Shown here: in pieces, positions 33,359 to 58,040 of the stretch | How the letters are laid out: each line of letters opens with the position of its first letter | Position numbering within the stretch: the stretch's first letter is position 1 | NCBI RefSeq assembly: GCF_002113885.1 | Contig: NW_018408629.1 | Location: 2,189,971-2,253,970 of the forward strand | Source of the DNA: Mizuhopecten yessoensis | Taxonomy: Eukaryota | Length of the DNA stretch: 64,000 nt | Direction of reading: 5' to 3' | Program-made: the position numbers and the translations under genes | The notes under the pieces: generated by a model | Databases searched by the model: none | What the model was told of the DNA's origin: nothing | The model's input: the letters and a program-made list of their open reading frames with translations, nothing else

Positions 33359-34486
33359 TTATTGTCCTGCAGGCGAAAGACTCATTTCCAAGAATTTTCT
33401 TTTCACAAAACACGTCCACCACTGAAAAGAGATAAGAAATCACAGTTGATAAAAGAGCATAGATATGAAATTAAACCAATGATTTGCGAAAAAATCCTTA
33501 ACACAAAGTGAACAACGTTAGTTGTCTTCTCGGACAAGGAGTATATTGCATTTGGCATTTATATAAGACATGTATCGCTGTGTCCGCTACAATCCATTGC
33601 AACTGTTGGAATATTTGTCTTACCGTGCTCTGCACAATTAAAGTTTAACTTTTTACCCAATGTTGCCCAGTATGCCAATTTGATGGGCCATTAAGACTAT
33701 AGCAAAACTTATCATAAACTAGAGAGAACAATAATTTCATATAAAATATATAATATGCGTGCTTCAACTTTTTAAAGGTTATTCTTAGAGACTAAAATGT
33801 TCTCGTAAAAAGGGGAGAAACGCATACTAGCTCTGGGTTTACAACTTCCCCACCCCTTATTCGGCATAACTATGTTGGTAAGCTTTCGAAAAATTATAAC
33901 TTCTGCTTTACAAACCTTGCCCCCTAACCCCCACCACGAGGAAAAAAATAGATAAGGCTAAGACTAGTCATATTTGTTTTCGTGACTTTATAGAGCGAAA
34001 TGTGAGGTCTAATTCGGTTAGTGCTGTGACAATTATTCATTATGTAAGTTAACGTAGAAATCCACTATGCAGCAACACCAACAAAATGTAGTTAATAGTC
34101 TTTCCAAACTGAAAAAGACGAGAAGTATTCAAGTCTTCTTTAATGCGATTTTTCAAAGAGAAAAGAAAATCAAGGACAGCGTTACTATACCTTGCTTGGT
34201 TTGTCTGTTTCAGAATCGATCACTTGTTCACACATACGAAGTGCTGTCTCTTGTCGGATCTGCTGGAGGTACGTCCTCATAGTATCTGTAAAATATATGG
34301 ATATGTTACATAAATGTATACTGTACATCACTTCTCCCTTATATAACAAAATAATGCTTATATATGCTTTCGGAAAAAAACCATTCGGAAAATGTATGAG
34401 GTCAATGCCATTCCATTTGTTTCAATGTGTTGGATATCCTGTGCTGTGAGATATACGATCACGTATGTTATAAAAAATATCAAAAC

Positions 34487-34517
<31 letters not shown>

Positions 34518-35220
34518 ATACACAATGGCTTTATTGTTAATTTATTTTATATTTTACAATCATTTTGATCATGATTAGAGTTGTCTCCCTTGAAAAAAAT
34601 CGAGACATTCTGCACGAAGATATTTTTTTTTTTTTTTNNNNNNNNNNNNNNNNNNNNNNNNNNNNNNNNNNNNNNNNNNNNNNNNNNNNNNNNNNNNNNN
34701 NNNNNNNNNNNNNNNNNNNNNNNNNNNNNNNNNNNNNNNNNNNNNNNNNNNNNNNNNNNNNNNNNNNNNNNNNNNNNNNNNNNNNNNNNNNNNNNNNNNN
34801 NNNNNNNNNNNNNNNNNNNNNNNNNNNNNNNNNNNNNNNNNNNNNNNNNNNNNNNNNNNNNNNNNNNNNNNNNNNNNNNNNNNNNNNNNNNNNNNNNNNN
34901 NNNNNNNNNNNNNNNNNNNNNNNNNNNNNNNNNNNNNNNNNNNNNNNNNNNNNNNNNNNNNNNNNNNNNNNNNNNNNNNNNNNNNNNNNNNNNNNNNNNN
35001 NNNNNNNNNNNNNNNNNNNNNNNNNNNNNNNNNNNNNNNNNNNNNNNNNNNNNNNNNNNNNNNNNNNNNNNNNNNNNNNNNNNNNNNNNNNNNNNNNNNN
35101 NNNNNNNNNNNNNNNNNNNNNNNNNNNNNNNNNNNNNNNNNNNNNNNNNNNNNNNNNNNNNNNNNNNNNNNNNNNNNNNNNNNNNNNNNNNNNNNNNNNN
35201 NNNNNNNNNNGAGAGAGAGA

Positions 35221-35260
<40 letters not shown>

Positions 35261-38200
35261 TCTGGGCCAGTAAAATAAAAAAAAAGATTTAAATAAGTTA
35301 ATTAAGAAGAATTATCTAGGAATCGAGGAGAGACGGAGAACATGAAAAATATGAAAAGCTGTTTTTACCTTGGTATTATTTAAATTAAACTTCCGCATAG
35401 TCTAATATTTTCATCCATTTTCTCCATTCTTTCTCAAACCTATCCTGTGCAGAATCACCTTGACTGTTTACAATATATTTTTGAACAGTATAATGTTCTT
35501 TAATCATGTTAACTAAGGCATTTGGGCTCAACGTTTGATGTCGACATCTTGTCTTATAAATATAAAACTTAATAATAATTAAAATTTCATTGTCAATTCT
35601 ATTATATGTCATACTCTCGTTTGCTACCAATAATCCAAAAAGAAAACTGATTTTATTAAATGAAAATGGGATAAAAAGTGCATCTAACAATATTTCAAAA
35701 CTTTGTAAAAAATTCTGTACTTCTCTACATTCCCACAAAATATGAATGATTGTTTCTTGTTCTAAATTACAAAGTGTACAGAGTGGACTTGTCACTAATC
35801 CTACTTTAAACATGGATGAATTTGTTGTCAAAATATGATGAACAATTCTATACTGAAACCATTGTAGTCTTGAATTTTTTGTTATTCTAAAAGGGGTCTT
35901 ATATATATCATTCCAATTAAAATTATTCAAATCCAATTTTTCTTCCCATTTTCTCCTCCCAGAAGCAATAGTATCTTTTTTTACCATAAGATTATAAAAA
36001 TCTTTTATCCCTTTTACTCTTTTTAAGAAAAATTTAATATTACAGGGTATGATAGGGTATACAATAGCATCCTTTTTACAATCAATTTTAACTAAATATT
36101 TCCTTATTGTAGTTAATACACCATGATATTGGATAAAATTTGTATTTACCTGATAAATTTGAGCAAATTCTTGAAATGTGTAAAAAGTGCAAGTCTCAAT
36201 GTCTTTTATTAAGTCATAAATTATAGTCACTCCTTTATTATACCATGTCTTGAAAAATATTGATTTTCCCCCAATAGTAAAATTCCTATTGTACCATAAT
36301 GGCATTTTCCAGATGCAACTTTCATTAATTTGTTTCACCCGCTCCTTTTCATTAAACCTTCTCCATGCTTTAAAGACATCTTTCCAAAAATAATTTGTGC
36401 ACTTATTAAGACATATTGGAATGTAATCACTTCCACAATGAGATAGCATATGTAAGTCAAGATGTGTTTCTAAGATAACTTGCCACTTGCCCGACTTCTG
36501 ATATAATCTCCGTATCCACCCTAATTTTAAGGAATCAATGAATGACCTTATATTAACCATTTTAAGACCTCCTTCAAAATAATTTTGAAATATCACATCT
36601 CTCCTTATTTTATCAGTTTTACTGTTCCATAAAAAGTTAAAGAGAACATTATTTAATTGATTCAAAAAAAGATCATCAGGATTTGGCAATGCAATAAATA
36701 AATGGTTAAATTGTGATATCATTAAAGATTTTATCAGATGGATTCTACCTATAGGAGTAAGTGATCTTCTGTTCCATGCCATGATAAGTGCTTTAAGTTT
36801 AATTAATTTTTTATCAAAATTTAATTTTGGGATTTCATGAAGATTGACACTAAATTCTATTCCCAGAAGCATGAATTTTGTCCTACCCCACTGCAATTTT
36901 AGATCAGGTAAAAATGTATCTTCACTATGTATTTTGCTCCCTATCCAAACCACCTGGGTTTTGTCTATATTTATCTTCAAACCAGATATTTTAGCGAAAG
37001 TATTCAATTCTGCTATCGACTCTTTTAAAGACCTTTCTGAACCATCTAAAATGAGAGAAGTATCATCAGCATACTGAGAAATAAGGATTGGACTTTTATT
37101 GACTTCTATACCCTTAATCTTATTGTTATTTCTAAGTCTTATGCCTAGTATTTCAACACACAAAATAAAAATGTAGGGGGCGATTGGATCACCTTGGCGA
37201 CAGCCTCTTTTTATGTTTAGAAATGATGAAAGATTACCACCTTGGTTTATAGTTGAACTTACATTGGTGTGCAGTAGTTTTATCCAGCATCTAATATCAG
37301 AACCAAAATTAAAATAATTTAAAACTTTATCAACAAATTCCCATGAGACTGAGTCGAATGCTTTCTCAAAATCTACCATTAATAACATACCTGGAATATA
37401 TCTTTCTTCTGCATATTGCATAATGTCATAAACTAATCTAGTATTTTCCCCTATATAACGGCCTGAAAGAAATCCTGTTTGATCTTCACTAATTAATTTA
37501 TCTAAAACTGTTCTAATTCTACCTGCTATCGATCCAGACGCTATTTTATAGACTATATTCAATAATGTTATGGGTCGCCAATTTTTTATGAACTGCCTAG
37601 GTTTATCTCCCTTGGGAATACATGTTATAATACCTTGCCTTTGTGTTACTGATAGCAAACCTTTCCTATACCCACAATTTATAGATCTAACAATGAACCC
37701 ACCTAGCTGTTTCCAGAAACACTTAAAAAATTCTACAGTAAACCCATCAGAACCGGGACTTTTGTTATTTTTCATATTTTTCAAAGTTTTTGTTGCTTCA
37801 TCTAAAGTAATTAACCCTTCTAGACCAAAAGAATCGTTATTTTCTAATTTTGAAACATCACATGTATTCAAAAAATCTGCTAAATCTATATCATCAATAT
37901 CAGTATTATTATCATATAACTTTTCATAAAATAAACGAACTTCTTCTAAAATTTCATTCTGTTGTGTAATAATAACATTATCATCTTTCTGTATCTTTGG
38001 TATAATCTTGGAAGTATAATTCCTATTTTCTAACTTGAAAAAATAATTTGTTGGCTTTTCTCCTTCCTCTTGCCATCTTGCCCTAGATCTAATTATACTA
38101 CCTCTTACCTTCCTCAACCTAATATTTTCCAATTCCCTTTTCTTAATTTCTAAATCTTCTATGTCTACATGTTCCTGCTCTTCAATAGTTTGTATTTTTC

Positions 38201-41200
38201 TCTTAAGATCATCTTCCTCCCTACTTTGCTGTTTCTTTCTATAAGATGAATAAGATATACTTTTACCTCTGATTTCCATTAATAATGTTTCAAGAAAAAG
38301 CTGGTCATCAATTACAAATTCTATTTCTGTATCTGGTATATTCATTATAGCATTCAGATTATACACTGGCAAAGAGTACTGAGTTTTTGTTTCTAAAATA
38401 ATATTTTTCACCATTTGATGATATTCTTCCTCATATAAAAGAGATGAATTAAATTTCCACAATCCCTTTCCCCGCTTGAATTCATTCAATTTTAAAACAA
38501 AAAAAATATCAAAAATATCAAAACTAATATGATGGGTAGGTATTCAGCCAGATGTTATGTATTAAATATAAGCAATACTATTCAAACATTTTCAACGTAT
38601 AAACGTTTCAAACTACGATCTAAATTGATAAATGTTAAAATGGGCAGCATTTACTCTTAGCCTTTTCCCAGACAGATAATATCAAATTTCTTAAGGTACT
38701 TTTTTGCAGACATTTGTCTTGCACTATTCCAATGTATTTGACTAAATGTTTTTTGTAAACAGTGGTTATAAGCATTAGTACCGTAATGTAGTTAAATAAA
38801 TTACAAACTCCACGTGTTACGCGCTCTATGCTCATGGAATATGTCATAGAAAAATGAAGGCACGCTGCAAGCTATTTAATTGGTTTTAGGTTGACAATTA
38901 CCCTGACCAATCGCAAGGCTGATAACTATTATTTGAAGATTACGAAGGAGCGACAACCGACTTTAAAGACAGTCAATGTTTTAGTGATGTACATCAAGTC
39001 TTGTCTTATCCACAAGGAGGCACACACTGGCCCTTCGTAATTGCCATGACATATTTCAGGGATTTAGAGAGCGTAAGTAAAACGCCGTTCCCGGATTTTG
39101 TGAAAGGGGATGTCTATGGGAAATACAGTTGGGGGAGGGGTCATGATCCCTAGTAGACCTCCTAAATACACCATTTATACGTATTTGATTTTGCAGGTAA
39201 AATTAAGAGGGAACTTGGTATATCTTTATTTGATGTCAAAAATACTAGTGTTAGCATAATGTATTTCATATCTTTATGCTGTTCCCATTAAATCAATTAT
39301 TATATATTAAGATCTAATCATTTTCAGTTTTATAAATAGTCTCGATATCATAATTAAATTATACCTTCTTCGCCGCGAGATGGTTTAGCATATAATGCAT
39401 TAAGCGGGAAACCAGGTTCTCCTGGAATAGGATACTTCTTCAATCCTAGGGTATGCATCTCTTTATGGCCCTGTTTCTGCGATGTACACTAGGAGTAAAG
39501 ATGTAAATTATTTGACTCCGTTAATAACTTATTCTGACGTTGTAAGACACAATCAAATACTTAGCATACTGTTAAACATGTCTCAGAACCTCATCATTTT
39601 TGATGGTTTAATCAATTGTATATACGCAACGTATTTCACATTAACATTGCCACTCAATCAGGATATCATACACATGACATTCAACATAAAAAAATGCACT
39701 TATATATAGGATCATTATATTCTTACATGAGTTTCATATCATATATGAGATTTATGAAACGAGTCTGGCGAGCTTAAATGAAAAATTCGTGACGAGTTTC
39801 ATGAAAACGAGTGTAAGATCCTTTTGATCATATAATCAAGATTTGGATTAGTGGCCTTGACACCAGACTTAGACATTTTGACAGTATGGTGCCCCCAAAC
39901 CCGACATCTATCTGTCAAAATGTCTCCCCACAACAAACATCTATCTGTCAAAATATCTCTCCACAACCGACATCTATCTTGGTCAAAATGTCTCTCCACA
40001 TTAGACATCTATCTCTCAAAATATCATTCCACAACAAACATCTATCTCTGTCAAAATGTCTCCCCACAACAAACATCTATCTGTCAAAATATCTCTCCAC
40101 AACCGACATCTATCTTGGTCAAAATGTCTCCACATTAGACATCTATCTCTCAAAATATCATTCCACAACAAACATCTATCTCTGTCAAAATGTCTACCCA
40201 CAACAAACATCTATCTCTGTCAAAATGTCTACCCACAACAAACATCTATCTCTGTCAAAATGTCTACCCACAACAAACATCTATCTCTGTCAAAATGTCT
40301 ACCCACAACAAACATCTATCTCTGTCAAAATGTCTACCCACAACAAACATCTATCTCTGTCAAAATGTCTACCCACAACAAACATCTATCTCTGTCAAAA
40401 TGTCTACCCACAACAAACATCTATCTCTGTCAAAATGTCGAAGTCTGATATCAGGGATAAAGGAAACAGAAGATAGCTTATCAAATACCAGCGGATGTCT
40501 CGATCTAGCAAACGTTGCTTGTCTGAGTAATATAGTAATTAACAAGCTGAATAATTATCAATTATACATACCTTTTGTAATTTCTTAATACATTCGGATA
40601 TGAATAATGTTATGTAGATCAGAGTACGATCCGCTTCGCTCTGCAAAACAACAGCAGTATAATGTTGATAAAAACATTTCTAATATTTTCTTTGTGCTTC
40701 TTGTCTAATTTTATGTTTAAATAAGGGCAAGCTTAGTATAAATATTTTATGAGACCAACGCCTGATACTTTAACGTCAATATCAAACATTAGCACAACGT
40801 AATAGCAGATAAATTAGGATTCAGAAAGATCTCATAATAAAAAAATCGTTGCAGATTTACTGTAATTATAATTAAGGTATATTCTCGGTATTATATGTTT
40901 TACAATATTTGAAGACATTTCACATGACATGGACTTTCCTCTTGGTATGAAAAGGAGTTTTGTATACTAACTATTTTAAAGATGAAGTTGATATTTCTCA
41001 CCTTTATTTCGTAGTTCTTGAAGAAAATATTGGATTTAAAGTAGTATATTCCCTCGTCCACTATATCAAAATCACTAGCTGAAAAAAAGAAGACACGCGA
41101 GAAGAGTAAATATCATGCTAGACAAGGACTTTCTGAAATGTTAGAGAATTCACCAAAATGTCACTTGTATAGATATTTAGTAAATACCATATCATTACAA

Positions 41201-42666: not shown

Positions 42667-44295
42667 AAATAATGATTTAAAGAATAAAACATACTTATCT
42701 CTGTTTTTACATAAATAATGATTAAACAAATTTTAACATACTGTTTTATGCATAAACCATCCGGGAAAGACCAACTTAAATACAGAAAAATCGAAAAATG
42801 CTTAGAATCATTCACTTTGAAAACAAAAGGATGAGGTTTGCAAAATAATAAAAGATAAATTAAACTTTATATAGAAGTACCTTCTTTAACAACATCAAAA
42901 TAATGCAGACTATATTTAAGAACAAAGTAAATTCACTTACTGTCTTGTGGAGCAGGTCCTTTAAAATTTGTTCTTAGAGGACACAGTGCCATGTTTCCCA
43001 CCAACTTGGGCGGGTTGAGGAACAGAGAATGATGAGGCTGCACAATCAAATATTTGAATTACATGATTAACAATTCGAAAATTCCCCACTGCTCTAAAAT
43101 CCCCGTATACTCATATGTATTTTTAATTAGTTTAAACAAATATGATATTGAAAATTGACAATAAAAACGAACAAGCAACACATTACATCAACATGAGATA
43201 GACCTTTCGCGAATAAATGAAACAATATATATTACATGATGTGTTCATTCAAAAATTACAAACATTGACAGGAGAGAGTTAACGGGGCTTCAAAGATCGA
43301 GAGCAAGGAGGATCAGACCATTACCTGAAGCGTGTCAAATTGTAGGTGGAAATGTCATGTTATATGGGATCAAATTAATTGGACAAAGGACCAATAGAAC
43401 TTATCAGTGAGTTTACGTTCCATCCAACTCTCCATCTTTACTGTATTAATCAGTTGTATGTTCTTGTTCTGAACATAGCCTCTTTAACTATGTTTATTTA
43501 GATAAATCTCAAAGAATATATTATTGGTCATAATGAGGAAACTAGGTAAGTGTCTTCAAGTAATTCGGTAAACATGTCATAATATAGAAAAATAAAAATA
43601 AAAAGGCATTTTCCTTATATTGTCTTAAGGTTGTGATGTCTCAAATATCACGACAAACATATGCATCTGCAAAACTTAGAAGAAAATGTTTATAAATCAT
43701 AATGATGACTTGGTTTGATTTGTTTGTGCGTTACGTCGTGTTAACAGCTGTGGGGAACTATGAGGACGAGCCATGTTTTCGTGATGGATGAAATCGGGAT
43801 GAATGTCAGCTGGTTTCTGTATATCACAGAATAACCATTTTTTTATAAGTTCTACATTGATTAACTGAGCTTTAAAAAATATGCATTATAATAGATATAC
43901 TAGTACCACATGTTGTTAAATCAAATCTGATTCTACGACTTCCCCGCCCGCAAGGTTTACCACTATGGTGGGGTGGGTGTGGTAGGGGTTATTCCCGAAG
44001 CTCAGAAAGCCCTCTAGATCCACCACTGCGTAATATTATGAAATACAGGATGGGTAACTAAAGTTATAACAATAATTCATAATGCTAACAGTCAATCAAA
44101 GTAGTAAATCGGGTAAGCATTCGGAATATAAAATCATAATACATATAGCACTGTATATTTCTTCGAATAGTTTATGATGAGTAAAGGAGAAAGCTCAGTA
44201 GAAAGACATGATCGTCTACCGATCCACTGTAACATTCTAAATACGGAATTGAACACGAGATAGTAAATATAGGAAGCTAATAATATTACCGGCAT
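33359..44295 (-). CDS. ARPC3: Actin-related protein 2/3 complex subunit 3, diverged tandem paralog (ARPC3-B), complete, 176 aa
   Basis: Exons (minus): 44290-44295, 42941-43037, 41002-41078, 40572-40640, 39365-39488, 34191-34285, 33359-33421; all GT-AG, same phases as the other copy, no stops. [32 protein letters not shown]...[39 protein letters not shown]...[18 protein letters not shown]...[12 protein letters not shown]...[25 protein letters not shown]. Confidence 0.92.
34638..35210. other. Assembly gap (573 N) inside the LINE 3' UTR
   Basis: Run of n between a T-run and a (GA)n tract. Confidence 0.99.
35211..35259. repeat. (GA)n microsatellite
   Basis: gagagaga tract abutting the gap. Confidence 0.95.
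35385..38489 (-). CDS. LINE ORF2 (Tx1/L1-like): RT and C-terminal zinc knuckle; APE endonuclease lost by 5' truncation
   Basis: [73 protein letters not shown]...HILWEC. Confidence 0.9.
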   Translation of the reverse strand: MNEFKRGKGLWKFNSSLLYEEEYHQMVKNIILETKTQYSLPVYNLNAIMNIPDTEIEFVIDDQLFLETLLMEIRGKSISYSSYRKKQQSREEDDLKRKIQTIEEQEHVDIEDLEIKKRELENIRLRKVRGSIIRSRARWQEEGEKPTNYFFKLENRNYTSKIIPKIQKDDNVIITQQNEILEEVRLFYEKLYDNNTDIDDIDLADFLNTCDVSKLENNDSFGLEGLITLDEATKTLKNMKNNKSPGSDGFTVEFFKCFWKQLGGFIVRSINCGYRKGLLSVTQRQGIITCIPKGDKPRQFIKNWRPITLLNIVYKIASGSIAGRIRTVLDKLISEDQTGFLSGRYIGENTRLVYDIMQYAEERYIPGMLLMVDFEKAFDSVSWEFVDKVLNYFNFGSDIRCWIKLLHTNVSSTINQGGNLSSFLNIKRGCRQGDPIAPYIFILCVEILGIRLRNNNKIKGIEVNKSPILISQYADDTSLILDGSERSLKESIAELNTFAKISGLKINIDKTQVVWIGSKIHSEDTFLPDLKLQWGRTKFMLLGIEFSVNLHEIPKLNFDKKLIKLKALIMAWNRRSLTPIGRIHLIKSLMISQFNHLFIALPNPDDLFLNQLNNVLFNFLWNSKTDKIRRDVIFQNYFEGGLKMVNIRSFIDSLKLGWIRRLYQKSGKWQVILETHLDLHMLSHCGSDYIPICLNKCTNYFWKDVFKAWRRFNEKERVKQINESCIWKMPLWYNRNFTIGGKSIFFKTWYNKGVTIIYDLIKDIETCTFYTFQEFAQIYQVNTNFIQYHGVLTTIRKYLVKIDCKKDAIVYPIIPCNIKFFLKRVKGIKDFYNLMVKKDTIASGRRKWEEKLDLNNFNWNDIYKTPFRITKNSRLQWFQYRIVHHILTTNSSMFKVGLVTSPLCTLCNLEQETIIHILWECREVQNFLQSFEILLDALFIPFSFNKISFLFGLLVANESMTYNRIDNEILIIIKFYIYKTRCRHQTLSPNALVNMIKEHYTVQKYIVNSQGDSAQDRFEKEWRKWMKILDYAEV
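38810..39090. mobile_element. Degenerate third copy of the CATC-TIR MITE family
   Basis: gaatatgtcatag..tgaaggcacg..gctatttaattggt..tgaccaatcgc..gaagattac..aggaggcacacactg matches the interiors of 17555-17905 and 45393-51174. Confidence 0.65.
39895..40440 (+). repeat. 35-bp minisatellite with a higher-order block, bounded by an inverted repeat
   Basis: Unit cacaacaaacatctatctctgtcaaaatgtctacc; left part is two about 136-bp blocks of four variant monomers, right part about 8 near-identical monomers. Confidence 0.95.
41117..41604 (+). mobile_element. 5'-truncated 3' end of an RTE-X-like LINE in ARPC3-B intron 2
   Basis: ORF 41138-41428 [14 protein letters not shown]...CKIC...[10 protein letters not shown], the same C-terminal motif type as 47307-50726; ends gttaataaagaat; candidate TSD gtaaatat(c/g)at at 41106-41116 and 41605-41615. 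Confidence 0.8.
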
Positions 44296-45452
44296 TGTTG
44301 AAACGTCCCCTTGTGATCCGCCCCTTAGACTTTTGACATCCAGTCAAGTGTAGTTATAAACATCCGTGTATGAACTGATAAGTGTGGATACGTCACTGGC
44401 TAGGCTCTCGTGTTAATACTGACTAGCTATACACCGTTATCATTACTGTTAGTTTGGTATACAGACGCATTGTTAACTTTCACGTAGTTCTGATCGATTA
44501 GATAATTCTGAAATGGGAGGATTTTTAAAAGTTTTCAGAAACAGATACAACGATCATTAACTTAGTTAATTAGGATATAACAAATTGCTATTTTGATTTA
44601 TCAACCAAAACATCCCTTGCGTTTTCTTTACATATGTCATCAAAGTGTATGTAAATCCGTTAATCAAATGCAAATTTGGTGAAACTGGGGCAAAATATGA
44701 ACTTACGAGGTATTTATAGGCAACCTGTGATAGGCAAAATGTGGTATACGTGTATTTATTTGCCTTTACCAGAATAAATATGATTAACCCTTGGACATTT
44801 GAGAATAAACTTTTTCTGCTTTATCGACAACACCGGTCATTTAAGTACAGGTCAAATTCTAGTTATATTGTCACGCTATCAAAGTAAGATCGGGGAAGAG
44901 GCGACACCAAATGGCATAGCGACCACTTTGCCCGTCTCTGGAAAAAAATGTGAAGTAATTAAGCTTGTCTGTCAACTATTGGCATCAATATCGGAAATCG
45001 TGATATTCGGAGCAAGCCCATGACATGGAAAAGGAAGCATTTCATATATTTTTGGTAGACGCTGAATCTGTTGTCCAATCAGTTACATATCAAGGGGCCA
45101 GCTGTACAACGAACATTAATAAGCTTAATCACTGTTTAATTAACAACCTATAATAATTTGGTCTATATACAAGGTAAAAACTCGTAATTTTGCATGTTAT
45201 TTTACTGTGCTACACTATTGCTATCTAGCAAATTTTTTACTTAGTTTGTGGTTGTGTTTTATAGAAAAATAAAAAATGAACTTGCGCTAACCACCGATTG
45301 AGTTGATTGATCACGTTTGAACAACCGGGCCCAGGTTTCACCTATTCTGCAAGTAAGGTTATATTTTACGTTAACTTTGCCCTTAGACACCTCATCGTCG
45401 ATATCCAGGGGTTACGTTCACGTTCGCTCTCTACACCCCTAGACTATGTCAA

Positions 45453-47213: not shown

Positions 47214-50200
47214 GGAGACGCGACAAGAGGTCAACCCCGTGACATTGATAAAGACACTATCAAGTTTACTTTCCTTAATGTTTGCGGTATTAAGTCTAAG
47301 ATACTTTTGCCTGAGTTTGAAGACTTAATCCTAGCACATGACATACTTATTTTTGCAGAGAGCAAGATTGATAATCTGGATCATTTACAACTACCGCCTG
47401 ACTATGAATATTTTGCTAAATGTAGAACTAATGCATATAAAAAATCTGGTGGTATAGTAATTATTTTTAAGAAAACTCTCAAGTCGATGTTGACTTTTCC
47501 TAAAACTTTATCAGAATATGTATTGTGGGTAAATTTTTCAAAACACGTTGTGAACTCTGATCTAGATTTTCTACTGGGATGTGTTTATATACCTCCCGAA
47601 AATACTAAGTATGCATCCCCGGAAGCGTTCAATGAAATTGAAAGGGAGATGATAGAATTATCCCATCATGGTAACAAAGTCGCCATAGTCGGAGATTTTA
47701 ATGCTAAAACCCAAGTTAGAGATGATTTTGTAGAACCAGATGATAACTTCATTCGTTCATTAAACTTAGATGAAAATGATGAGCTATACTCATATCTCTA
47801 TGATATTGAAAAGTTGAAATTATATAATGTTCCTCTGCGAAGGGCTAGTCAATGTAAAGCTAAAGTTAATAATTATGGCAATAAATTGCTTGACTTCTGC
47901 AAGCAAAATAATATGTATATTGCCAATGGTCGGATTGGAAATGATGCACAAATAGGTAAAACTACATGTAGTGATGTCAGCGTTATAGATTATCTATTGC
48001 TGTCGTCAGATATGTTTCGGTATACAACAGATTTTGAAATCAAAGTTTTTGACCCACTCATATCAGATGTCCACTGTAGACTTGTATTTAGCCTTTGTAA
48101 ATTAACTGATGAATGTATATATAATACCGAATGTCATGAAAATCGATATACAAAGTGGAAATCCTGTAAAGAACAAGATTTTGTAAAACATATACTAGAT
48201 GATGAAAGAGGTAATCTCCATAGAATTAATGATAAATTAAATGAATTATTAAATAAACAACACGACAATGTAACCAATAACGAAATTAATGACATTGTAA
48301 ACTCAATTAGTGAATTGTTCAAAGGCTCTGCTAAGCAGGTTTTTGGTAGTAACAATGCTTACAGGAAACGGAGGTTGAGATGTGATAATAAACCTTGGTT
48401 TAATAGGGAATGCCACTTAAACAGAGTTGAATTTAATAAAGCCAAGGCCTTATTTCACAAAGTAAATAATCCTATAAATAAAACTAATCTCAATAGAGCT
48501 AGTAAAGTTTATAGAAAAACATTGAATAAAAATTACAGAAATTATCAGGAGAAATTGTCAAGCGAGTTAAGAAATACTGCTAGAATGGATTCAAAAAAAT
48601 TCTGGAATATTTTGAATAAATGTGACGGATCTGTAAAGAAAGGTAATGCTGATATATGTATTACTGAATTATATGAATACTTTAAGGATCTGAACAAGTC
48701 TGTTTATGATGATGACGATTTTGAGCTGGAAAATCCTGATAATAGTATTTTTGATGATTATCTGAATGGTGAAATTACCACTGATGAAATTAAATTTTCT
48801 TTAATCAATTTGAAGAATAGTAAAGCCTCTGGTATAGATCAAATCCTAAATGAATATCTAAAAAGTACAATGGATGTATTTTTACCAATTTATCAAAAAA
48901 TATTTAACCTTATTCTGAATACTGCGTCTATACCAGATGTGTGGAAGATCGGTATTATAAAACCAGTATATAAAAACAAAGGCGATCCAAAAGATCCGGA
49001 TAATTATAGAGCGATCACTTTAGTCTCGTGCCTTGGCAAAGTTTTCACTTCGGTTATTAATAATCGTTTAAATAAAATTTCTGACGAATTTGACCTGATA
49101 AGCAGTGCACAAGCTGGGTTTAGAAAGGGTCATTCTACAACCGATAACATGTTTGTATTGTATTCTTTAATCTCAATATATTTTTCATTAGGAAAAAAAC
49201 TTTATTGTACGTTCATCGATTTTAGTAAGGCGTTCGATTCTGTATGGAGAGTTGGTCTGTGGAAAAAGCTCCAAAAAAGCAACATTACTGGAAAAATTTT
49301 CAATATTATTTATAAGCTATATGATAAAACCAAATCATGTGTTAAAAATGGATGTGAACAGTCGGATTTGTTCAATTGTGAGATCGGTTTAAAACAGGGC
49401 GAAAATTTATCGCCATTTTTGTTTGCAATTTATTTAAATGATTTAGAAACTTATCTTGTTGAAAAAAATGTAAATTGTCTTCAAACAATAGACAAATTAT
49501 GTATTGATAACATTGGAGTGTATCTCAAACTATTCATTATCTTATATGCCGATGATACTGTCCTGTTTTCAGAAACACCAGATGGTTTACAGTTAGCTTT
49601 AAATGAATTTGAACAATACTGTAATACTTGGAAGTTAACTATCAATTCAGGAAAAACTAAAATTGTCATCTTTTCAAAAAGAAAATGTGCAAGAACTCCC
49701 CATTTTACATTATGTAACGTAGAATTAGAAATACTGGAAGGGTATACCTATCTAGGATTATTCTTTAATTTTAGTTGTAGCTTCTTTAAAGCAAGGAAAA
49801 AAATTGTTGAACAAGCACAGAAATCAGTGTTTGCTGTCTATAAGAAATTGAGAAACATATCTTTACCAGTTGATCTACAATTGAAGATATTTGATTCATT
49901 AATTATGCCAGTTCTTCTCTATTCATCAGAAATATGGGGTTTTGAAAACACAAATATTATAGAAAAAATCCATCTTCAATTTTGTAAATATATACTAAAT
50001 GTAAGAAAAAGTACACCAAATTTCATTGTTTATGGTGAGCTTGGAAGATACCCACTAGACATCGAAATTAAATGTAGAATAATAGTATTCTGGCATAAGT
50101 TGATTACCTCTAGTAAGTTATCAAGTACTATTTATAAGCTTATGTATACATTACATGAAAATGGAACTATGTTATTTAAATGGCTCGCATATGTTAAAGA

Positions 50201-50726
50201 TATTTTTTCTCAAACTGGCCTGAACTATGTGTGGTACTATCAATCTACATGTTCTTTTTCAAAAGACGAAATTAAGAGGCTTGTGAAAAGTAGACTGAAG
50301 GATCAATTTATACAGAAATGGTTTGATAATATTCTTAACTCCTCTAGAGGACAAACATATTCAATATTAAAGACAAAGTTTGAACAAGAAAAATATTTAA
50401 TTAAACTTAATACAAATGATAGGAAAATAATGTGTAAATTCCGTTCTTGCAATATGCATTTACCCATAGAAAAAGGAAGATGGTTAGGTATTCCTCGTCA
50501 AGAAAGAACCTGTACATTATGTAATTTGTACATTGGAGATGAATTTCATTACTTATTTATATGTGAAAGTGTTTTAGTTAAATGTCTAAGAGAGAAATAT
50601 ATACCAAAATATTATTTCACTTATCCAAGTCAATTAAAAATGCAAGGATTGTTTAATATATTTAATGTAAAAATTCACACAAAACTTTGTAAATTCATAG
50701 AAAAGCTTGAAAAAATATTAACTTAA
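47214..50726 (+). CDS. LINE ORF2p (APE endonuclease + reverse transcriptase + C-terminal Cys/His motif), open from the codon after the ORF1 stop
   Basis: TIKFTFLNVCGIKSK, IFAESK, VYIPP, VGDFNA, IDY, SDVH; KASGIDQI, NYRAITL, DFSKAFD, QGENLSP, LYADD; IEKGRW...CTLC...DEFHYLFIC. No internal stops. Confidence 0.93.
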   Translation, partial: GDATRGQPRDIDKDTIKFTFLNVCGIKSKILLPEFEDLILAHDILIFAESKIDNLDHLQLPPDYEYFAKCRTNAYKKSGGIVIIFKKTLKSMLTFPKTLSEYVLWVNFSKHVVNSDLDFLLGCVYIPPENTKYASPEAFNEIEREMIELSHHGNKVAIVGDFNAKTQVRDDFVEPDDNFIRSLNLDENDELYSYLYDIEKLKLYNVPLRRASQCKAKVNNYGNKLLDFCKQNNMYIANGRIGNDAQIGKTTCSDVSVIDYLLLSSDMFRYTTDFEIKVFDPLISDVHCRLVFSLCKLTDECIYNTECHENRYTKWKSCKEQDFVKHILDDERGNLHRINDKLNELLNKQHDNVTNNEINDIVNSISELFKGSAKQVFGSNNAYRKRRLRCDNKPWFNRECHLNRVEFNKAKALFHKVNNPINKTNLNRASKVYRKTLNKNYRNYQEKLSSELRNTARMDSKKFWNILNKCDGSVKKGNADICITELYEYFKDLNKSVYDDDDFELENPDNSIFDDYLNGEITTDEIKFSLINLKNSKASGIDQILNEYLKSTMDVFLPIYQKIFNLILNTASIPDVWKIGIIKPVYKNKGDPKDPDNYRAITLVSCLGKVFTSVINNRLNKISDEFDLISSAQAGFRKGHSTTDNMFVLYSLISIYFSLGKKLYCTFIDFSKAFDSVWRVGLWKKLQKSNITGKIFNIIYKLYDKTKSCVKNGCEQSDLFNCEIGLKQGENLSPFLFAIYLNDLETYLVEKNVNCLQTIDKLCIDNIGVYLKLFIILYADDTVLFSETPDGLQLALNEFEQYCNTWKLTINSGKTKIVIFSKRKCARTPHFTLCNVELEILEGYTYLGLFFNFSCSFFKARKKIVEQAQKSVFAVYKKLRNISLPVDLQLKIFDSLIMPVLLYSSEIWGFENTNIIEKIHLQFCKYILNVRKSTPNFIVYGELGRYPLDIEIKCRIIVFWHKLITSSKLSSTIYKLMYTLHENGTMLFKWLAYVKDIFSQTGLNYVWYYQSTCSFSKDEIKRLVKSRLKDQFIQKWFDNILNSSRGQTYSILKTKFEQEKYLIKLNTNDRKIMCKFRSCNMHLPIEKGRWLGIPRQERTCTLCNLYIGDEFHYLFICESVLVKCLREKYIPKYYFTYPSQLKMQGLFNIFNVKIHTKLCKFIEKLEKILT

Positions 50727-52634: not shown

Positions 52635-55600
52635 TCACTGTCCGGGTGCTGACAAACTCTTGTCCAAAAACTTCCTCTTTGAAAAGCACATCCACCACTG
52701 AAAAATTGAAGGTTAACAAATATCAATACACGATATCAATTGTTACTTATCATTTACTTAATATATGTGTCAATTAAAATCAAAGTTATTACCAACTCAT
52801 TCTTATTTTAACCCTTTCATCCCTATGTAATTTTAGTAAGCTCTACCATGTAATAATTTGGAGCAGTCCATTATGTTCTATAGTGGTGAAAGTGTTGAAA
52901 TAAAGGGTAAAGGATCATAAAACTCTCAAATATTGTACTGGAAATACTCTTAAAGAAATGGGCTACTTTACTTTGACGGACAAAAATACTTTCCTAAATA
53001 TTATCACTCTTTATCAACTTTAAGAAGTGATTTATAGTTTTAGTGATTGATTAGATGAAACATCTGTAATGGCATCAGGAATAAATGCATGGAATACACT
53101 CGGAAAAATTGGATTTCATATTAACTAAAAAATAACTGTAGAACGTACATATCAACCTGTTTATGCTTCCATGAAAATGTAACCAACGCAAAATCAGTAA
53201 AGTGGAAAAATAGGTCACAGTAACCTACATGTCATAACATGTCACCTAAAGGTGAAATACCCTTGAAGATGAATCTTTATATACCGTTTGATGACTGATT
53301 GGAGTGGGTTGTGGGGGTATGACTTAAGCAAAAGAGATAATTCTTGCACAAACGCACAAACTGAATATAAGAAACATTTTTATACATTTAAACATGCATA
53401 TAAAGCAAACTTTTATTTGTTGGGACCTCTGTGACAATATTCATGCATAAATGTCCCCTGAGTATACATATATATCTGTTTCACATGGAATATTTTTACG
53501 AGTTTTTATGAGTGTAAGCAATTTGGTCTCTCGCCATCATGACTGTTCCGAGGCCATATTTATGTTCAGAACAACAAAGGAATTGATATCTTTCTGCATT
53601 GTTTCCTTTCGCTCCAATTGCATTTTACCCAATTGTAGAAGTATTTTTTGACAGACAATGTCATGTGAACATCATCTTTCAGTACATAAACTTCAATAAA
53701 AATCCACTTTTGACATTCTGTCAAAGATTTCTGTGAAATCACAACTTGATTTGGCCCTAATTAATCTGACAGTAGCGCAGAAACACAGAAACACTTTCTG
53801 ATCAGAAAACATTGCTTATAAAGCAGGTGTTATGTGAAGTTTAGTTTGGGGTTTTAAGCAACATATATCACCAATTTAAGTATATTAACTTAGAGCTTAA
53901 GGTGTAGACAAAAATGCATTTTTTTTTTAAATGTACTGCATACAGCTTTTATTACATACAGCCTCACTTTCATCTTTATTAGAATAATGCAATATTGAAG
54001 ATTTTAAGGAAAGGAATGCTGGATGGTTTGTGCAGTAACATGTTGGCAAAAATAACCCTGTTCTACAGAATTACAAAAATAATCGTTCAGCATGTGGAAG
54101 TAAAATAAACAGTGACAATTTTAGCTATGTACCTTGCTGGGTTTGTCTGAGGCTTGCTCAAACACCTTCTCACACATGCGAAGTCCTGTCTCCTGTCGGA
54201 TCTGCTGGAGGTAGGCCCTCATGTTATCTGTGGAACAAAAAAAGTTGATTGTACTTTTTTACAACTTTTCAAAGGTGTACTGTAAGGAATCAGACATTTT
54301 GGGTTGTTAGTATTTTACATGATCCTGATAAGAGACGTATATAGTCATTTAAGGAAGTGCCAGATATCAGAAGTGGAGCAAAACCAGAGTGCCCGGAGAC
54401 CCCCCCCCCCCCACCAACTGGCAGTCGGTACCTGGCGACTGCCCCATGTGATTCTCAAACCCCCGACCCACTGGTGGAAGGCTAGTGATTGTCAGACGCC
54501 TTAACCACTCGGCCACTGCGAACCCAGAATCGGACAGGAATTCAGGTACCAATCCAGACAAAAGCATTCAAACATTTATGTACATGTATTTATTTGGTTC
54601 ATCCTCATATCCCATATTTTGAAACACTCTCTTTACAAAAAAAGTTATTACTTAACGAATCAATGACTAAGGAATAATTCACTGTCTGACAATTTCTTTG
54701 ACAATATTTTTGTATTCTTTTTCTATTTCTGTAGACTCGGTCTCAAATGTTTTACTGTTTGAAAACAAAGCATTACTGTGATGAAAGTGGCAACTTAAAA
54801 GGAGGTCATTTTGAATTTGAAATAGTGATCTATGCCTCTAACAAGCTCCCTCCTCGAAACAGGACCACATGTGATGCATTCCAATACATTTGTATGTACT
54901 CTACATTTGGGATCCATGTATGTACTGTTTAATGACAAGACTATAAATAGGGGCAAGTACACGGTCACCATACAATTGTCATTGCATTTTGATAAACTAA
55001 TCAGAATGCAGTACAGTATGAAATTAATTATGCCAAGATTTTGTTCAGTCTAGTTGTGTTGTAGATGCTGTGCAGGTCTCAGCAACCTAGCTTGTCCTAC
55101 CTTCTTCACTGCGACCGGATGGTTTGGCAAACATTGCATTGAGTGGGAAACCTTTCTCTCCAGGAATAGGGTAGTTGTATATACCAATCGTGTACATTTC
55201 CTTCTGTCCCTGGTTTTTAGACTGACACTGAAATTAAGACATAAATATACCATAAATTTTTATGGGCTTGTTGACTCCAAATCGTTATAAACACCAATCT
55301 ACCTTTGATGCTACTTTTCCTGTTTGATACCGTTTATTTTTATGGTTTTTCCAAAAAAAAAATCATAAAACCGGAACTGCGCACTATACCAGAGTGTGCA
55401 CTATACCCGCATATTTCTGGTATCTCTTTATTATATTTACCTTGACATTTGATTTGGAAGTTTAGCACAATAAAACTAAATTTGTCTCTCAAAATAAGGG
55501 AGAGTAAAGTACAATAAACTAAAATATTTTTAAAATTTTGATTTGCATATAATTATGAAAATATTAAAACATTAAATTATTAGTTCTATAAAGCTAACAG

Positions 55601-58040
55601 TGCTTTAAACGAGGTACAGGTATGCAGTCAGAATTTTTAGGCAACTTGTATCTGTCCAGAAAGCATGGTACCCACCTTCTGGAATTTCTTAAGGCACTCC
55701 GATATGAACAATGTAATGTAAATTAAGGTACGGTCTGCTTCACTCTGTTTGGAAAAGAAATAGATTATTAACTTGTGGTAAAATGTTCAATCAAAATAAC
55801 ATGGCATTGGATTATTTGGAATGTGTAACTTGTTGTGTCAAGACATTCAACAAAATCTATTAAATCTTCTATTCATTGTGTAAATTATTTGCAAAATATT
55901 TGTATATGTTGACAGAAATATTAATACTGAAAATTGATGTTGAATTTTAACTGCAGCTATTTAATATCGAATTTGTATTTTGAAGTGATAGATAATTTAT
56001 GAACTTACCTTTATTTCATAATTTCTGAAGAAGATATTGGCTTTGAAATAGTAAATTGCTTCATCAATGATATCAAAGTCACTCGCTGCAATAGAATTAA
56101 ATGGTCTGTTAATACCACATGAACATTTTTTTTTGTGTAGTATCTCTACGTAACACGATGCCTCACATCCAGTATATATATACACAGTATAGTCGGTACA
56201 ATCACTGGGTACCTGCAGTTCTGGTAATGTTTTCCAATAAATATGTGACAATATACCAGACAGTCGACAACAATAACGAGTAAGCAAACCTAAACAATGC
56301 TATAAGATATGTTTGAATTGTGTTGTATATACTAGATTACTAAGTCACCACTGTAGACCATAATGGACTCATCCAGATCAAAGCATGGTAGACTTTACTC
56401 AAGTTAAATAGGGGTCAAAGGGCTAATAAGAGAATACAATTTTTTGGTGGGAAAGTGTCTCTGCAAACTCATTTGTTTTTGTACATTAGTATTTATCCAA
56501 ATACAATAGTTATTCTAAACAAATGGCAAGCTTTATTCCTATACTTTAGATTTTAAATGGCTATTTATATGGTCATGATTTTCAGATATAGCACATTGCA
56601 ATTTTAATTTTCTCACTAGTACATTTGAAAGAAGTGATATATACCAGATTAAATACTAACACAGTATAGACCGTTATGGAGCTGATATATATATACAGAT
56701 TACCAGAGAACCTGATAATTAGCTCCATGCATGGATTCCTTGCCTTCATATATACAAGTTAACAGATATAACTGGATAATTGCAAAATCCAACTGATTTT
56801 AATAACTTATTATTCTTTCCAATGTTCTTTCATCAGTTACTGGTACACCATTGTGAAAGAGTTCAGACTATTGCAGTTGAAAAAAGGTACTTTTGAGATA
56901 AATATTGCTATAGGTTTTTATTGATTTTGTTTCATTAATTGGTTTTAAAAGTGATTCATGATGTTGTTTGTCATTCCAGGTTTTGTCTTGACATCTTCAA
57001 TGTCGTGTATTCTTGGAATACAACTTAAATTCATTAATAAAAGAAAGTATATATTGGAATGTTTTGCTGTCATGCCTCTTGTTACATGAAAATTGGCTAG
57101 TCACAATGTGTTCCAATAGATCTTCCAGGAAACACATTTCAGGTTTTTTTCATAAGAAAACTATCATCACTACTGCAATATTTATCGACTTTGAAATCCA
57201 TATTAATGTATTGCTTTTATGTTGATAACTATTGCATTACATTACAATAGTACAATGAATGTATTACTGTACTCCTAGCTTATTTTCGAAGTCTTTCTAC
57301 AGAGGCACTAACATGCATTTTGGAAATTGATCTGCCTATATATCATATACAGTAATATATGTAGCCTGTTTTGCTGTTGCTCAAGGACAGGTCTGCCTAT
57401 ACATTTATATAGGTTATAGAATCAACCAAAACAAATCGCTTCCGTGTACAAGGAAGTTTCTGAAGATAAAAACTAAGGCAGCTATTTAACTTACTATCCC
57501 TGGGAGCTGGTCCCTTGTAAGATGTCCTCAGTGGTAACAGCGCCATGTTCCCCAACACCTGGGGTGGGTTCTGGAACTGAGAGTGGTACGCCTAAAATTG
57601 GAAACACTTAATCTTTAAAATCTAACAAAACGTATTGTTGAAAAAATAAAAAGATGAAATATTTAAAAATCAAAGAATATCCATTTCTAACCCAGAGAAA
57701 TGTGAAATCACCGGGGTTCGTTAAAAATATCTAACGCCAAAATCACTCTGCGATTACTTGTTTTATAAAAATCTTCTGTTTGGTTGGCTATTAGCCATAT
57801 CAGTATAGCATATATTATATGTATTAGACATTTTTAACGCTTGTTGTTATGACTCACAGCAAATTTCCGTGATACATTACATATAGGCCTATATCTTCTC
57901 GAGATCAAGACCATATAACGTTATAAATTTGTTTTTTTGGAGACACTGAATTATATTTTGTATTATGTTCCCAATGCCTCATGTACAAGTTCCGTACATG
58001 CAAATTAAATTGATCAAAGAAGAAGCTTTCTTACCGGCAT
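52635..58040 (-). CDS. ARPC3: Actin-related protein 2/3 complex subunit 3 (ARPC3-A), complete, 177 aa
   Basis: Exons (minus): 58035-58040, 57495-57591, 56009-56085, 55676-55744, 55101-55227, 54133-54227, 52635-52697. [32 protein letters not shown]...[34 protein letters not shown]...[13 protein letters not shown]...[12 protein letters not shown]...[25 protein letters not shown]. Confidence 0.96.
52808..52898. mobile_element. TTAA MITE family 2 copy
   Basis: ttaaccctttcatccctatgtaa...gtccattatg...agtggtgaaag, homologous to 26365-26455. Confidence 0.65.
54301..54525 (-). mobile_element. tRNA-derived SINE, same family as 16042-16269
   Basis: Minus strand gcagTGGCCGAGTGGttaaggcgtct...cactagccttccacca...tctccgggcactctggttttgctccac...ttaaatgac. 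Confidence 0.75.
56337..56426. mobile_element. TTAA MITE family 2 copy (reverse orientation, degenerate)
   Basis: caccactgtagaccataatggactcatccagatcaaagcatggtagac is the reverse complement of the 26365-26455 interior. Confidence 0.6.

What the first reader, a model, noticed from the sequence alone, without database searches (positions are those of the whole stretch)
33359..58040. Two intact, diverged tandem ARPC3 genes: a candidate specialised Arp2/3 iso-complex
Seen: a complete second ARPC3, not evident from the ORF track because its exons are 6-124 nt, lies downstream of the first in the same orientation, with the same seven-exon structure, intact splice sites and no stops. About 46 of 177 positions differ (about 74% identity by hand) and no intron similarity is visible, so it looks old and under purifying selection. 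Copy B changes the highly conserved N-terminal MPAYHS to MPPHHS and alters DEA>DEG, ETG>ETA and DKSL>EMSL, yet keeps human-like residues where A diverges ([12 protein letters not shown]). Copy A retains the promoter shared with GPN3, so B has its own. Established: ARPC3 is single-copy in most animals (Drosophila has Arpc3A/B); paralogs of ARPC1, ARPC5 and ARP3 give functionally distinct Arp2/3 complexes. Inference: a lineage-specific, possibly tissue-restricted Arp2/3 variant.
Basis: partly seen in the sequence, partly recalled or inferred. Interest (0 to 1): 0.8.

Follow-up and report, generated by a model that had tools for sequence, protein, structure and literature searches.

The report
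Scallop-specific second ARPC3 gene
The window, almost certainly Yesso scallop, holds two intact copies of ARPC3 (a small Arp2/3 actin-branching subunit); the second copy is an old duplicate found so far only in scallops, still under strong purifying selection, already annotated but unstudied, and nothing yet shows what it does differently.

Summary
There are two seven-exon ARPC3 genes on the minus strand: A at 58040-52635 and B at 44295-33359. All introns are GT-AG with the same phases. The proteins share 131 of 177 positions, and DNA similarity is confined to the exons.

The assembly gap lies inside B's intron 5, next to a LINE tail, and removes no coding sequence.

Both models equal stored Mizuhopecten yessoensis proteins (XP_021370482.1 and XP_021370502.1). 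B-type orthologues exist in Pecten, Argopecten and Ylistrum, always in the order GPN3 | A | B | flotillin. Oyster and pearl oyster have one ARPC3 at that locus.

Within the B clade dN/dS is 0.04-0.07, as low as for A. B changed faster early on: 14 of 17 polarisable fixed differences are B-derived, several at sites invariant in the 27 outgroups. B also has its own conserved promoter block, unrelated to A's.

B is therefore a long-kept, functional, scallop-lineage paralogue. Whether it builds a specialised or tissue-restricted Arp2/3 complex is untested, and I found no transcript evidence for B either way.

It is a new member of a known kind, comparable to fly Arpc3A/B and mammalian ARPC1, ARPC5 and Arp3 isoforms. 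Interest is moderate.

The parts
58035..58040 (-). ARPC3-A exon 1 (ATGCCG, codes Met-Pro)
   Evidence: The same 6-nt exon with a GTAAG donor is found in Pecten and Ylistrum A.
57495..57591 (-). ARPC3-A exon 2
   Evidence: P21-Arc profile positions 3-35
56009..56085 (-). ARPC3-A exon 3
   Evidence: P21-Arc 40-63
55676..55744 (-). ARPC3-A exon 4
   Evidence: P21-Arc 64-86
55101..55227 (-). ARPC3-A exon 5 (127 nt)
   Evidence: P21-Arc 87-127
54133..54227 (-). ARPC3-A exon 6
   Evidence: P21-Arc 131-158
52635..52697 (-). ARPC3-A exon 7 with stop codon
   Evidence: P21-Arc 159-173. The joined model equals P0146 = XP_021370482.1.
58041..58428 (.). Intergenic region (388 nt) shared head-to-head by ARPC3-A and the GPN3-like gene. 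A conserved block at 58041-58099 lies next to A's ATG.
   Evidence: The same arrangement is seen in Pecten, Argopecten, Ylistrum and Ostrea.
58429..58476 (+). First coding exon of the GPN-loop GTPase (GPN3-like) gene. Further exons run to at least 63322.
   Evidence: ATP_bind_1 PF03029 on four collinear exons. Orthology to GPN3 itself rests on product size (282 aa in the neighbours' annotation) and on memory of the motif; it was not formally tested.
44290..44295 (-). ARPC3-B exon 1 (ATGCCG)
   Evidence: The context ACAACAATGCCGGTAA is conserved in all four scallop B genes.
44296..44400 (-). B's own proximal promoter block of about 105 nt, conserved in four genera. It contains TGACGT (44395-44390), CGGATGTTTATAAC (44366-44353) and GGGGCGGATCACA (44323-44312).
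   Evidence: Mean pairwise identity is 0.68 here against 0.22-0.31 further upstream. No similarity to A's block. Promoter function is inferred, not shown.
42941..43037 (-). ARPC3-B exon 2
   Evidence: P21-Arc 4-35
41002..41078 (-). ARPC3-B exon 3
   Evidence: P21-Arc 40-63
40572..40640 (-). ARPC3-B exon 4
   Evidence: P21-Arc 64-86
39365..39488 (-). ARPC3-B exon 5 (124 nt, one codon shorter than in A)
   Evidence: P21-Arc 87-125
34286..39364 (-). ARPC3-B intron 5 (5079 nt as assembled). It holds a 5'-truncated LINE (RT ORF 38489-35385, (TC)25 tail 35260-35211) and the assembly gap.
   Evidence: The same intron is 553-677 nt in three gap-free scallop assemblies.
34638..35210 (.). Assembly gap (573 N). 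It is intronic, flanked by T12 on the low side and (GA)25 on the high side.
   Evidence: Not filled and not looked up.
34191..34285 (-). ARPC3-B exon 6
   Evidence: P21-Arc 130-158. Carries B-type states T127 and A140.
33359..33421 (-). ARPC3-B exon 7 with stop codon
   Evidence: P21-Arc 159-173. The joined model equals P0299 = XP_021370502.1 / OWF42286.1.
46116..50726 (+). Non-LTR retrotransposon with two open ORFs, lying in the A-B intergenic region. It is context, not part of either gene.
18039..24968 (+). Flotillin (Band_7) gene, convergent with B. It is the conserved downstream neighbour.
   Evidence: neighbours. Exon limits are approximate.

Best explanation
The window, almost certainly from the Yesso scallop Mizuhopecten yessoensis, carries the ancestral ARPC3 gene (A) and a tandem duplicate (B). 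A is still head-to-head with the GPN3-like gene. B lies 8.3 kb downstream, between A and flotillin.

The duplication happened before the scallop genera Mizuhopecten, Pecten, Argopecten and Ylistrum split. It most likely happened after the scallop lineage left the oyster and pearl-oyster lineages.

B then changed quickly, including at sites that are otherwise invariant in animals: A3P, Y4H, I41V, A44G, L78I and G140A. Since then it has been held under purifying selection as strong as that on A. It is transcribed from its own conserved promoter.

The most likely function (inferred, not shown) is an alternative p21 subunit. It would take A's place on Arp3 in a share of Arp2/3 complexes and tune activation or branch stability. 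Fixed A/B differences fall in the loop that the Arp2 D-loop wraps in the active complex (residues 115-116), in the helix before it (88-101) and at the N-terminus.

Shown: gene integrity, age, selection, synteny, distinct promoter sequence, retained fold.
Inferred: incorporation into the complex, altered kinetics, restricted expression.
For: - Gene models and splice sites.
- Family assignment: (AF2 pLDDT 87; Foldseek TM 0.83-0.87 to ARPC3 chains).
- Identity to stored proteins of M. yessoensis.
- Orthologues and synteny GPN3|A|B|flotillin.
- Single copy at the same locus in Ostrea and Pinctada.
- All eight CDS intact.
- dN/dS (NG86) within B 0.037-0.070 at dS 0.74-1.8; within A 0.034-0.054.
- B clade 100/100 with a stem of 0.31, against 0.11 for A; A and B are sisters in the ML tree.
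- 14 B-derived against 3 A-derived fixed changes (p=0.013), and relative-rate tests.
- Promoter blocks.
- Mapping of contact segments by the S. pombe alignment onto PMC9894260 and PMC10918085.
Against: - There is no direct evidence that B is transcribed, translated or incorporated. No B-type protein from any transcript-derived source (Logan, JGI, ENA) appears in the collection. Argopecten A has several Logan RNA contigs; the three returned (L006-L008) each carry the unspliced 534-nt CDS. That absence is weak evidence, because Yesso A is also missing from those sources.
- The A+B sister grouping has only 65/74 support.
- No charge shift like that of fly Arpc3B is seen; pI is about 9 for both copies.
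- The Arp2 beta-strand contact (N56-E58) is identical in A and B. Some differences in the D-loop docking loop are A-derived, not B-derived.
Confidence: 0.7

Rival explanations
1. B is biochemically equivalent to A and is kept only because expression has been partitioned or for dosage. This would be subfunctionalisation of regulation without any change in how the complex works.
For: Both copies are equally constrained. The fold, pI and the N56-E58 Arp2 contact are unchanged. The promoters differ.
Against: B fixed changes at six positions that are invariant or nearly so (26-27 of 27) in the outgroup animals, and has kept them in four genera. The early acceleration was asymmetric.
Confidence: 0.25
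2. The duplication is older than scallops, for example at the base of Pteriomorphia, and B was lost in oysters, pearl oysters and others.
For: B's placement among molluscs is poorly resolved. The A+B clade has only 65/74 support, and relative-rate asymmetry vanishes with Pinctada or Solemya as outgroup.
Against: The ML tree joins A and B. Ostrea and Pinctada keep the ARPC3-flotillin order with one exon set (Ostrea also shows GPN3) and no relic of a second copy. No B-type protein from any non-pectinid was found.
Confidence: 0.12
3. B is a silent or decaying copy, that is, an unprocessed pseudogene that merely looks intact.
For: No transcript-derived B sequence is in the collection. In this genome one intron is bloated by a LINE.
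Against: The reading frame and all splice sites are intact in four genera separated by dS of 0.7-1.8, with dN/dS of 0.04-0.07. The promoter block is conserved.
Confidence: 0.02
4. The second copy, or its last two exons, is an assembly artefact: an uncollapsed haplotype, or a wrong join at the gap.
For: A gap of estimated length separates exons 1-5 from exons 6-7 of B.
Against: The copies differ at 26% of residues and their introns are unalignable. Exons on both sides of the gap carry B-type diagnostic states. Order, strand and phase fit. Three gap-free assemblies of other genera have the same seven exons in the same order.
Confidence: 0.01

Closest known systems
Drosophila Arpc3A / Arpc3B
   Same: A lineage-restricted second ARPC3 gene kept across a whole clade. 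A 2025 preprint reports that complexes with Arpc3B polymerise actin more slowly, and that Arpc3B is expressed in select tissues while Arpc3A is ubiquitous (PMC12632905; PMC2174088, listed).
   Different: The origin is independent: the scallop A and B group together in the tree, away from arthropods. Fly Arpc3B is acidic (pI 6.78 against 9.37), whereas scallop B keeps pI of about 9. The scallop pair is a tandem pair with the ancestral exon structure. That preprint calls Arpc3 diversification unique to flies, which the scallop pair contradicts.
Mammalian Arp2/3 iso-complexes (ARPC1A/B, ARPC5/5L, Arp3/Arp3B)
   Same: Paralogous subunits that give complexes with different nucleation and branch-stability properties and non-redundant roles (as summarised in PMC12632905; structure 6yw6).
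   Different: Different subunits are involved, and mammals have one ARPC3. No biochemical or expression data exist for the scallop pair.
Canonical ARPC3 (p21-Arc) of bovine and fission-yeast Arp2/3 complex (PDB 1k8k_E, 8e9b_E)
   Same: Full-length match by sequence (E=3e-86 and 2e-51) and by predicted fold. The Arp2 D-loop strand contact N59-E61 (S. pombe numbering) is conserved.
   Different: B departs at the otherwise invariant A3, Y4, I41, A44 and L78, and at G140 (invariant in the 27 animal outgroups; S. pombe itself has Ala there). It also has an extra conserved Cys21.
Drosophila Arp2 paralogues (Arp2D and others)
   Same: Clade-restricted duplicates of a highly conserved Arp2/3 subunit, specialised for one tissue, the testis (PMC12632905; 10.1101/2023.02.25.530036).
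   Different: Different subunit. Tissue specificity of scallop B is unknown.

Membership tests
ARPC3 / P21-Arc (Pfam PF04062) | Sequence matches the family profile over its whole length | tested here: met
   Six exons of each copy tile profile positions 3-173 in order. Summed bits are 185.8 for A and 164.8 for B. Precomputed PF04062 is recorded on the B-cluster representative P0149.
ARPC3 / P21-Arc (Pfam PF04062) | Single-domain protein of about 175-180 residues with the ARPC3 fold | tested here: met
   B is 176 aa. AF2 model: pLDDT 87, pTM 0.84. The 15 matches with E<=0.001 are all ARPC3 chains of Arp2/3 complexes; full-length chains give TM 0.78-0.87.
ARPC3 / P21-Arc (Pfam PF04062) | Residues invariant across animals are retained | tested here: inconclusive
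   Most are kept: 41 invariant columns still include B. However, B has fixed changes at six positions held by 26-27 of 27 outgroups.
ARPC3 / P21-Arc (Pfam PF04062) | Is a stoichiometric subunit of the seven-subunit Arp2/3 complex, bound to Arp3 | not testable with these tools
   Needs co-purification or a complex structure.
Tandem gene duplicate (not a retrocopy) | Adjacent, same strand, no gene between, ancestral introns retained at the same positions and phases | tested here: met
   Only a LINE lies between the copies. The same holds in Argopecten and Ylistrum, and Pecten A and B lie about 12.6 kb apart on one chromosome.
Arp2/3 subunit isoform that defines an iso-complex (as ARPC1A/B, ARPC5/5L, fly Arpc3A/B) | Second gene for the same subunit maintained by purifying selection | tested here: met
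   dN/dS within the B clade is 0.037-0.070.
Arp2/3 subunit isoform that defines an iso-complex (as ARPC1A/B, ARPC5/5L, fly Arpc3A/B) | Separate regulation or differential expression | tested here: inconclusive
   The conserved promoter blocks are distinct. No expression data are available, and no B-type transcript-derived protein is in the collection.
Arp2/3 subunit isoform that defines an iso-complex (as ARPC1A/B, ARPC5/5L, fly Arpc3A/B) | Complexes with either isoform differ in activity or stability | not testable with these tools
   Needs recombinant complexes and actin assays.
Fly-Arpc3B-like mechanism | Strong acidic shift of the paralogue (pI 6.78 against 9.37) near the WASP acidic-region site | tested here: not met
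   Scallop A has pI 8.96-9.08 and B has pI 8.74-9.05.

The most novel reading that the evidence does not exclude
Scallops evolved, independently of flies, a second p21 subunit that makes a distinct Arp2/3 iso-complex. Its altered N-terminus (PHH instead of AYH), extra Cys21 and re-modelled helix and loop next to the Arp2 D-loop dock would change activation or branch lifetime. It would be used in a particular cell type, with germ line, haemocytes and fast muscle as obvious candidates. That would make ARPC3 a recurrent target for tuning branched-actin networks, and scallops a natural second test case.
Probability: 0.35. Interest if true: 0.65.

Novelty: new member of a known kind. Interest (0 to 1): 0.45.

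Why it matters
ARPC3 links Arp3 to the Arp2 D-loop and buries more new surface than any other subunit when the complex switches on (PMC9894260). A naturally diverged, long-conserved second version is therefore a ready-made probe of that step.

A 2025 preprint describes Arpc3 diversification as unique to Drosophila. The scallop pair is an independent second case, in a phylum with almost no Arp2/3 biochemistry. It is conserved in four farmed species that have genomes and RNA-seq, so the expression question could be settled quickly.

Without expression or biochemical data it remains an annotated but uncharacterised paralogue.

Tried and rejected
- Aligning B's intron 5 flanks to the orthologous introns of Pecten, Argopecten and Ylistrum, to test continuity across the gap. 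The introns are too diverged even among those three, so the test is uninformative.
- The large representative search with B's exon 5. It returned mostly fragments and odd isoforms, because animal ARPC3s collapse at 50% identity. It served only to obtain non-window rows for the query alignment.
- A search for B-type fragments of 50-159 aa as a proxy for partial transcripts found none; all hits were 76% identical or less.
- Gene conversion between A and B. There is no within-species excess of similarity in any exon or at third positions.
- A charge shift as in fly Arpc3B is absent.
- Similarity between the A and B promoters: none.
- Literature. No paper in the searchable library holds any of the six accession numbers searched. 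'ARPC3 + scallop' and a 'yessoensis' phrase search gave only unrelated papers.
- Retrocopy, haplotig and pseudogene readings were rejected; see the rival explanations.
Full report
**Observation**

The window is AT-rich (34% G+C). It has one long N run at 34638-35210 and a single N at 31746.

A translated comparison of the two halves of the finding showed six collinear coding matches, all on the minus strand. Reading the flanks gave complete gene models.
- Copy A spans 58040 to 52635 and copy B spans 44295 to 33359.
- Each has seven exons of 6/97/77/69/127 (124 in B)/95/63 nt.
- Every intron is GT..AG, the phases are identical, and there are no internal stops.
- The products are 177 aa (A) and 176 aa (B).

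The first exon is only ATGCCG in both copies. This explains why the gene is invisible in an ORF list.

The proteins share 131 of 177 aligned positions, which is 46 differences including a one-codon indel.
- Coding DNA identity is 74%, but only 48% at third positions.
- dS is therefore saturated, at about 1.2-1.5 by the two methods that converged.
- dN is about 0.14.

blastn between the two gene regions finds nothing but the six larger exons. The window holds no third copy. Each exon of at least 20 codons hits Pfam P21-Arc in collinear order from profile position 3 to 173 in both copies.

**The gap (tested first, as asked)**

The N run lies inside B's intron 5 (39364 to 34286).
- In gene sense it is 352 nt upstream of exon 6's acceptor.
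- It is 4154 nt downstream of exon 5's donor.
- It is flanked by T12 on one side and (GA)25 on the other.
- The (GA)25 run is the microsatellite tail of a 5'-truncated LINE, whose reverse-transcriptase ORF (38489-35385) lies in the same intron.

Because the gap is intronic, its length cannot disturb the reading frame. Exon 5 ends with one base and exon 6 starts with two. Together they give the same Asp codon position as in A. No profile positions are missing beyond the same small junction seen in A.

Physical continuity cannot be proven from the window, but three indirect tests agree.
- Exons 6 and 7 carry B-type diagnostic residues (T127, A140, T160, V163, I/M170, P174). The B orthologues of three other genera share these.
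- Order, strand and phase fit.
- In three gap-free assemblies the same seven exons occur in the same order, with an intron 5 of only 553-677 nt.

**How the searches were done**

No database search was made with a joined (spliced) model, because a joined protein has no reference. That step was left out.
- Exons were searched by reference.
- One query was an alignment whose rows were two stored proteins plus the twelve exon references.
- The joined proteins and CDS were built only inside scripts, from window coordinates, for local comparison.

Once the collection returned stored proteins identical to the models, their ids were used.

The large representative search was used once, with B's exon 5. 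An exon-length query cannot reach full-length kin in the word search. It gave mainly fragments.

Some representatives looked mammalian. I did not search further with them and took no contig for human.

**What the genes are**

P0146 (XP_021370482.1, Mizuhopecten yessoensis) is identical to model A. P0299 (XP_021370502.1 / OWF42286.1, same species) is identical to model B. The window is therefore Yesso scallop or something indistinguishable from it. [quoted passage not shown]

B's 90% cluster contains three more proteins, from Pecten maximus, Argopecten irradians and Ylistrum balloti. A-type proteins exist for the same three species. All four genera belong to Pectinidae.

**Synteny and timing**

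The fetched loci show GPN-loop GTPase (divergent) | A | B | flotillin (convergent) in Argopecten and Ylistrum. In Pecten, B lies next to flotillin and A next to the GTPase, about 12.6 kb apart on the same chromosome.

The window has the same layout. The GTPase gene starts at 58429, and flotillin exons lie on the plus strand at about 18-25 kb.

Ostrea edulis shows GPN3 | ARPC3 | flotillin, and Pinctada shows ARPC3 | flotillin. In both, only one set of ARPC3 exons is present, with no relic of a second.

In a 40-protein ML tree:
- The four B proteins form a clade with 100/100 support on a long stem (0.31).
- The four A proteins form a clade with 82/80 support on a stem of 0.11.
- A and B are sisters, but with only 65/74 support.

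The searches of the protein collection, covering lengths of 50-313 aa, found no B-type protein outside Pectinidae.

The best reading is a tandem duplication on the scallop stem lineage. An older duplication with losses elsewhere is not excluded.

**Selection**

I rebuilt all eight coding sequences. Every one is intact, with canonical splice sites and the 6-nt first exon.

| Comparison | dN/dS (NG86) | dS |
|---|---|---|
| Between B orthologues | 0.037-0.070 | 0.74-1.8 |
| Between A orthologues | 0.034-0.054 | 0.64-1.03 |

B has therefore been as tightly constrained as A since the genera split.

The divergence is asymmetric and early.
- 27 positions are fixed-different between all A and all B.
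- Polarised with 27 outgroup animals, 14 are B-derived, 3 are A-derived and 10 are unclear (binomial p=0.013).
- Tajima relative-rate counts give B two to four times more unique changes, and this is significant with most outgroups.
- Six B-derived changes hit positions held by 26-27 of the 27 outgroups: A3P, Y4H, I41V, A44G, L78I and G140A.
- B also gained a conserved Cys21.

There is no sign of gene conversion between the copies.

**Regulation**

About 105 nt directly upstream of B's ATG are conserved in all four genera. Mean pairwise identity is 0.68 there, against 0.22-0.31 further upstream. This is notable because neutral sites between these genera are near saturation.

The block contains a TGACGT element, a TTTATAA-like element and a GGGGCGG box. 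Naming these as CRE-, TATA- and GC-box-like is my reading, not a test.

A has a different conserved block next to its ATG, in the 388-nt region it shares with the GTPase gene. The two promoters show no similarity to each other. B therefore has its own long-conserved control region, which allows different expression but does not show it.

**Structure and likely mechanism**

An AlphaFold2 model of B is confident (pLDDT 87, pTM 0.84). All its significant Foldseek matches are ARPC3 chains of Arp2/3 structures, with TM 0.83-0.87 for the best full-length chains.

In the fission-yeast branch junction the following contacts are reported (PMC9894260, PMC10918085).
- ARPC3 touches only Arp3 in the inactive complex.
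- On activation it gains contacts with Arp3 and the Arp2 D-loop. Residues N59-E61 form a strand pair, and the D-loop circles P113-P120.
- It also makes a small contact with the mother filament at R94.

By the alignment these segments map to scallop residues as follows.

| S. pombe segment | Scallop residues | A against B |
|---|---|---|
| N59-E61 | 56-58 | identical in A and B |
| P113-P120 | 111-118 | A has AMF[A/S]K, B has ALYAK |
| R94 | K92 | same residue, within the helix 87-99 |

Helix 87-99 and the turn after it form the most divergent stretch between A and B (positions 88, 95, 97 and 99-101).

The inference, not shown here, is that B still assembles on Arp3 but alters the energetics of the active state or of the branch.

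Unlike fly Arpc3B, there is no acidic shift. pI is about 9 for both copies (PMC12632905).

**Expression**

I found no evidence either way.
- Argopecten A is carried by several Logan RNA-seq contigs. The three returned (L006-L008) each hold the unspliced 534-nt CDS.
- Argopecten B is on the genome record only.
- No B-type protein comes from Logan, JGI or ENA.
- Yesso A is also absent from those sources, so the absence carries little weight.

**Comparison and verdict**

The closest precedent is Drosophila Arpc3A/B. A 2025 preprint calls this diversification unique to flies. It reports slower polymerisation with Arpc3B and expression of Arpc3B in select tissues.

The mammalian ARPC1, ARPC5 and Arp3 isoforms are the general model. 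The scallop pair is an independent instance of that kind. No paper in the searchable library mentions it.

The functional part remains a reasonable but untested hypothesis.

Noticed in passing
window 46116-50726 (+): A non-LTR retrotransposon with both ORFs open lies between the two ARPC3 genes. ORF1 is 365 aa. ORF2 is 1139 aa with endonuclease and reverse-transcriptase domains. It may be a recently active element.
   Followed up: partly
window 35211-38489 (-): A 5'-truncated LINE sits in B's intron 5: a 1034-aa RT ORF with no endonuclease domain found. It ends in a (TC)25 tail that abuts the assembly gap. It accounts for the intron being 5 kb here against about 0.6 kb in other scallops.
   Followed up: partly
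window 39904-40439: A minisatellite in B's intron 4, with a 35-nt unit repeated 15.7 times at 88% match. It produces spurious long ORFs on both strands.
   Followed up: no
L003 (Ylistrum balloti): A exons 3 and 6 at 4294-4370 and 6106-6197; B exons 3 and 6 at 15342-15418 and 17442-17533: Both paralogues of Ylistrum carry Y46H (CAC in A, CAT in B) and a one-codon deletion at the same place in exon 6. Flanking synonymous sites differ, so no conversion tract is evident. This could be parallel change, possibly co-evolution with a shared partner, or micro-conversion.
   Followed up: partly
L001:15064-15114 (Pecten maximus, B intron 4): A decayed fragment resembling the first half of exon 5 (71% identity over 17 residues) lies about 470 nt upstream of the real exon 5.
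   Followed up: no
L003:12600 (Ylistrum B), L001:10001-10067 (Pecten B), and stored protein P0302 (Yesso A, GenBank model): The annotated N-termini differ from the conserved 6-nt first exon. XP_060068678.1 starts MTFNLL. XP_033747990.1 has 22 extra residues from an upstream in-frame ATG. OWF42287.1 has a 17-residue alternative start. These are probably annotation artefacts caused by the tiny first exon.
   Followed up: partly
window about 18039-24968 (+): A flotillin (Band_7) gene is convergent with B. GPN3-ARPC3-flotillin is seen in scallops and oyster, and ARPC3-flotillin in pearl oyster, so the microsynteny is old.
   Followed up: partly
window 3608-3853 (-): An ORF whose translation looks, by eye, like the N-terminal part of a PPP-family Ser/Thr phosphatase catalytic subunit. 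No family scan was run.
   Followed up: no
window 31746: A single N in otherwise read sequence.
   Followed up: no
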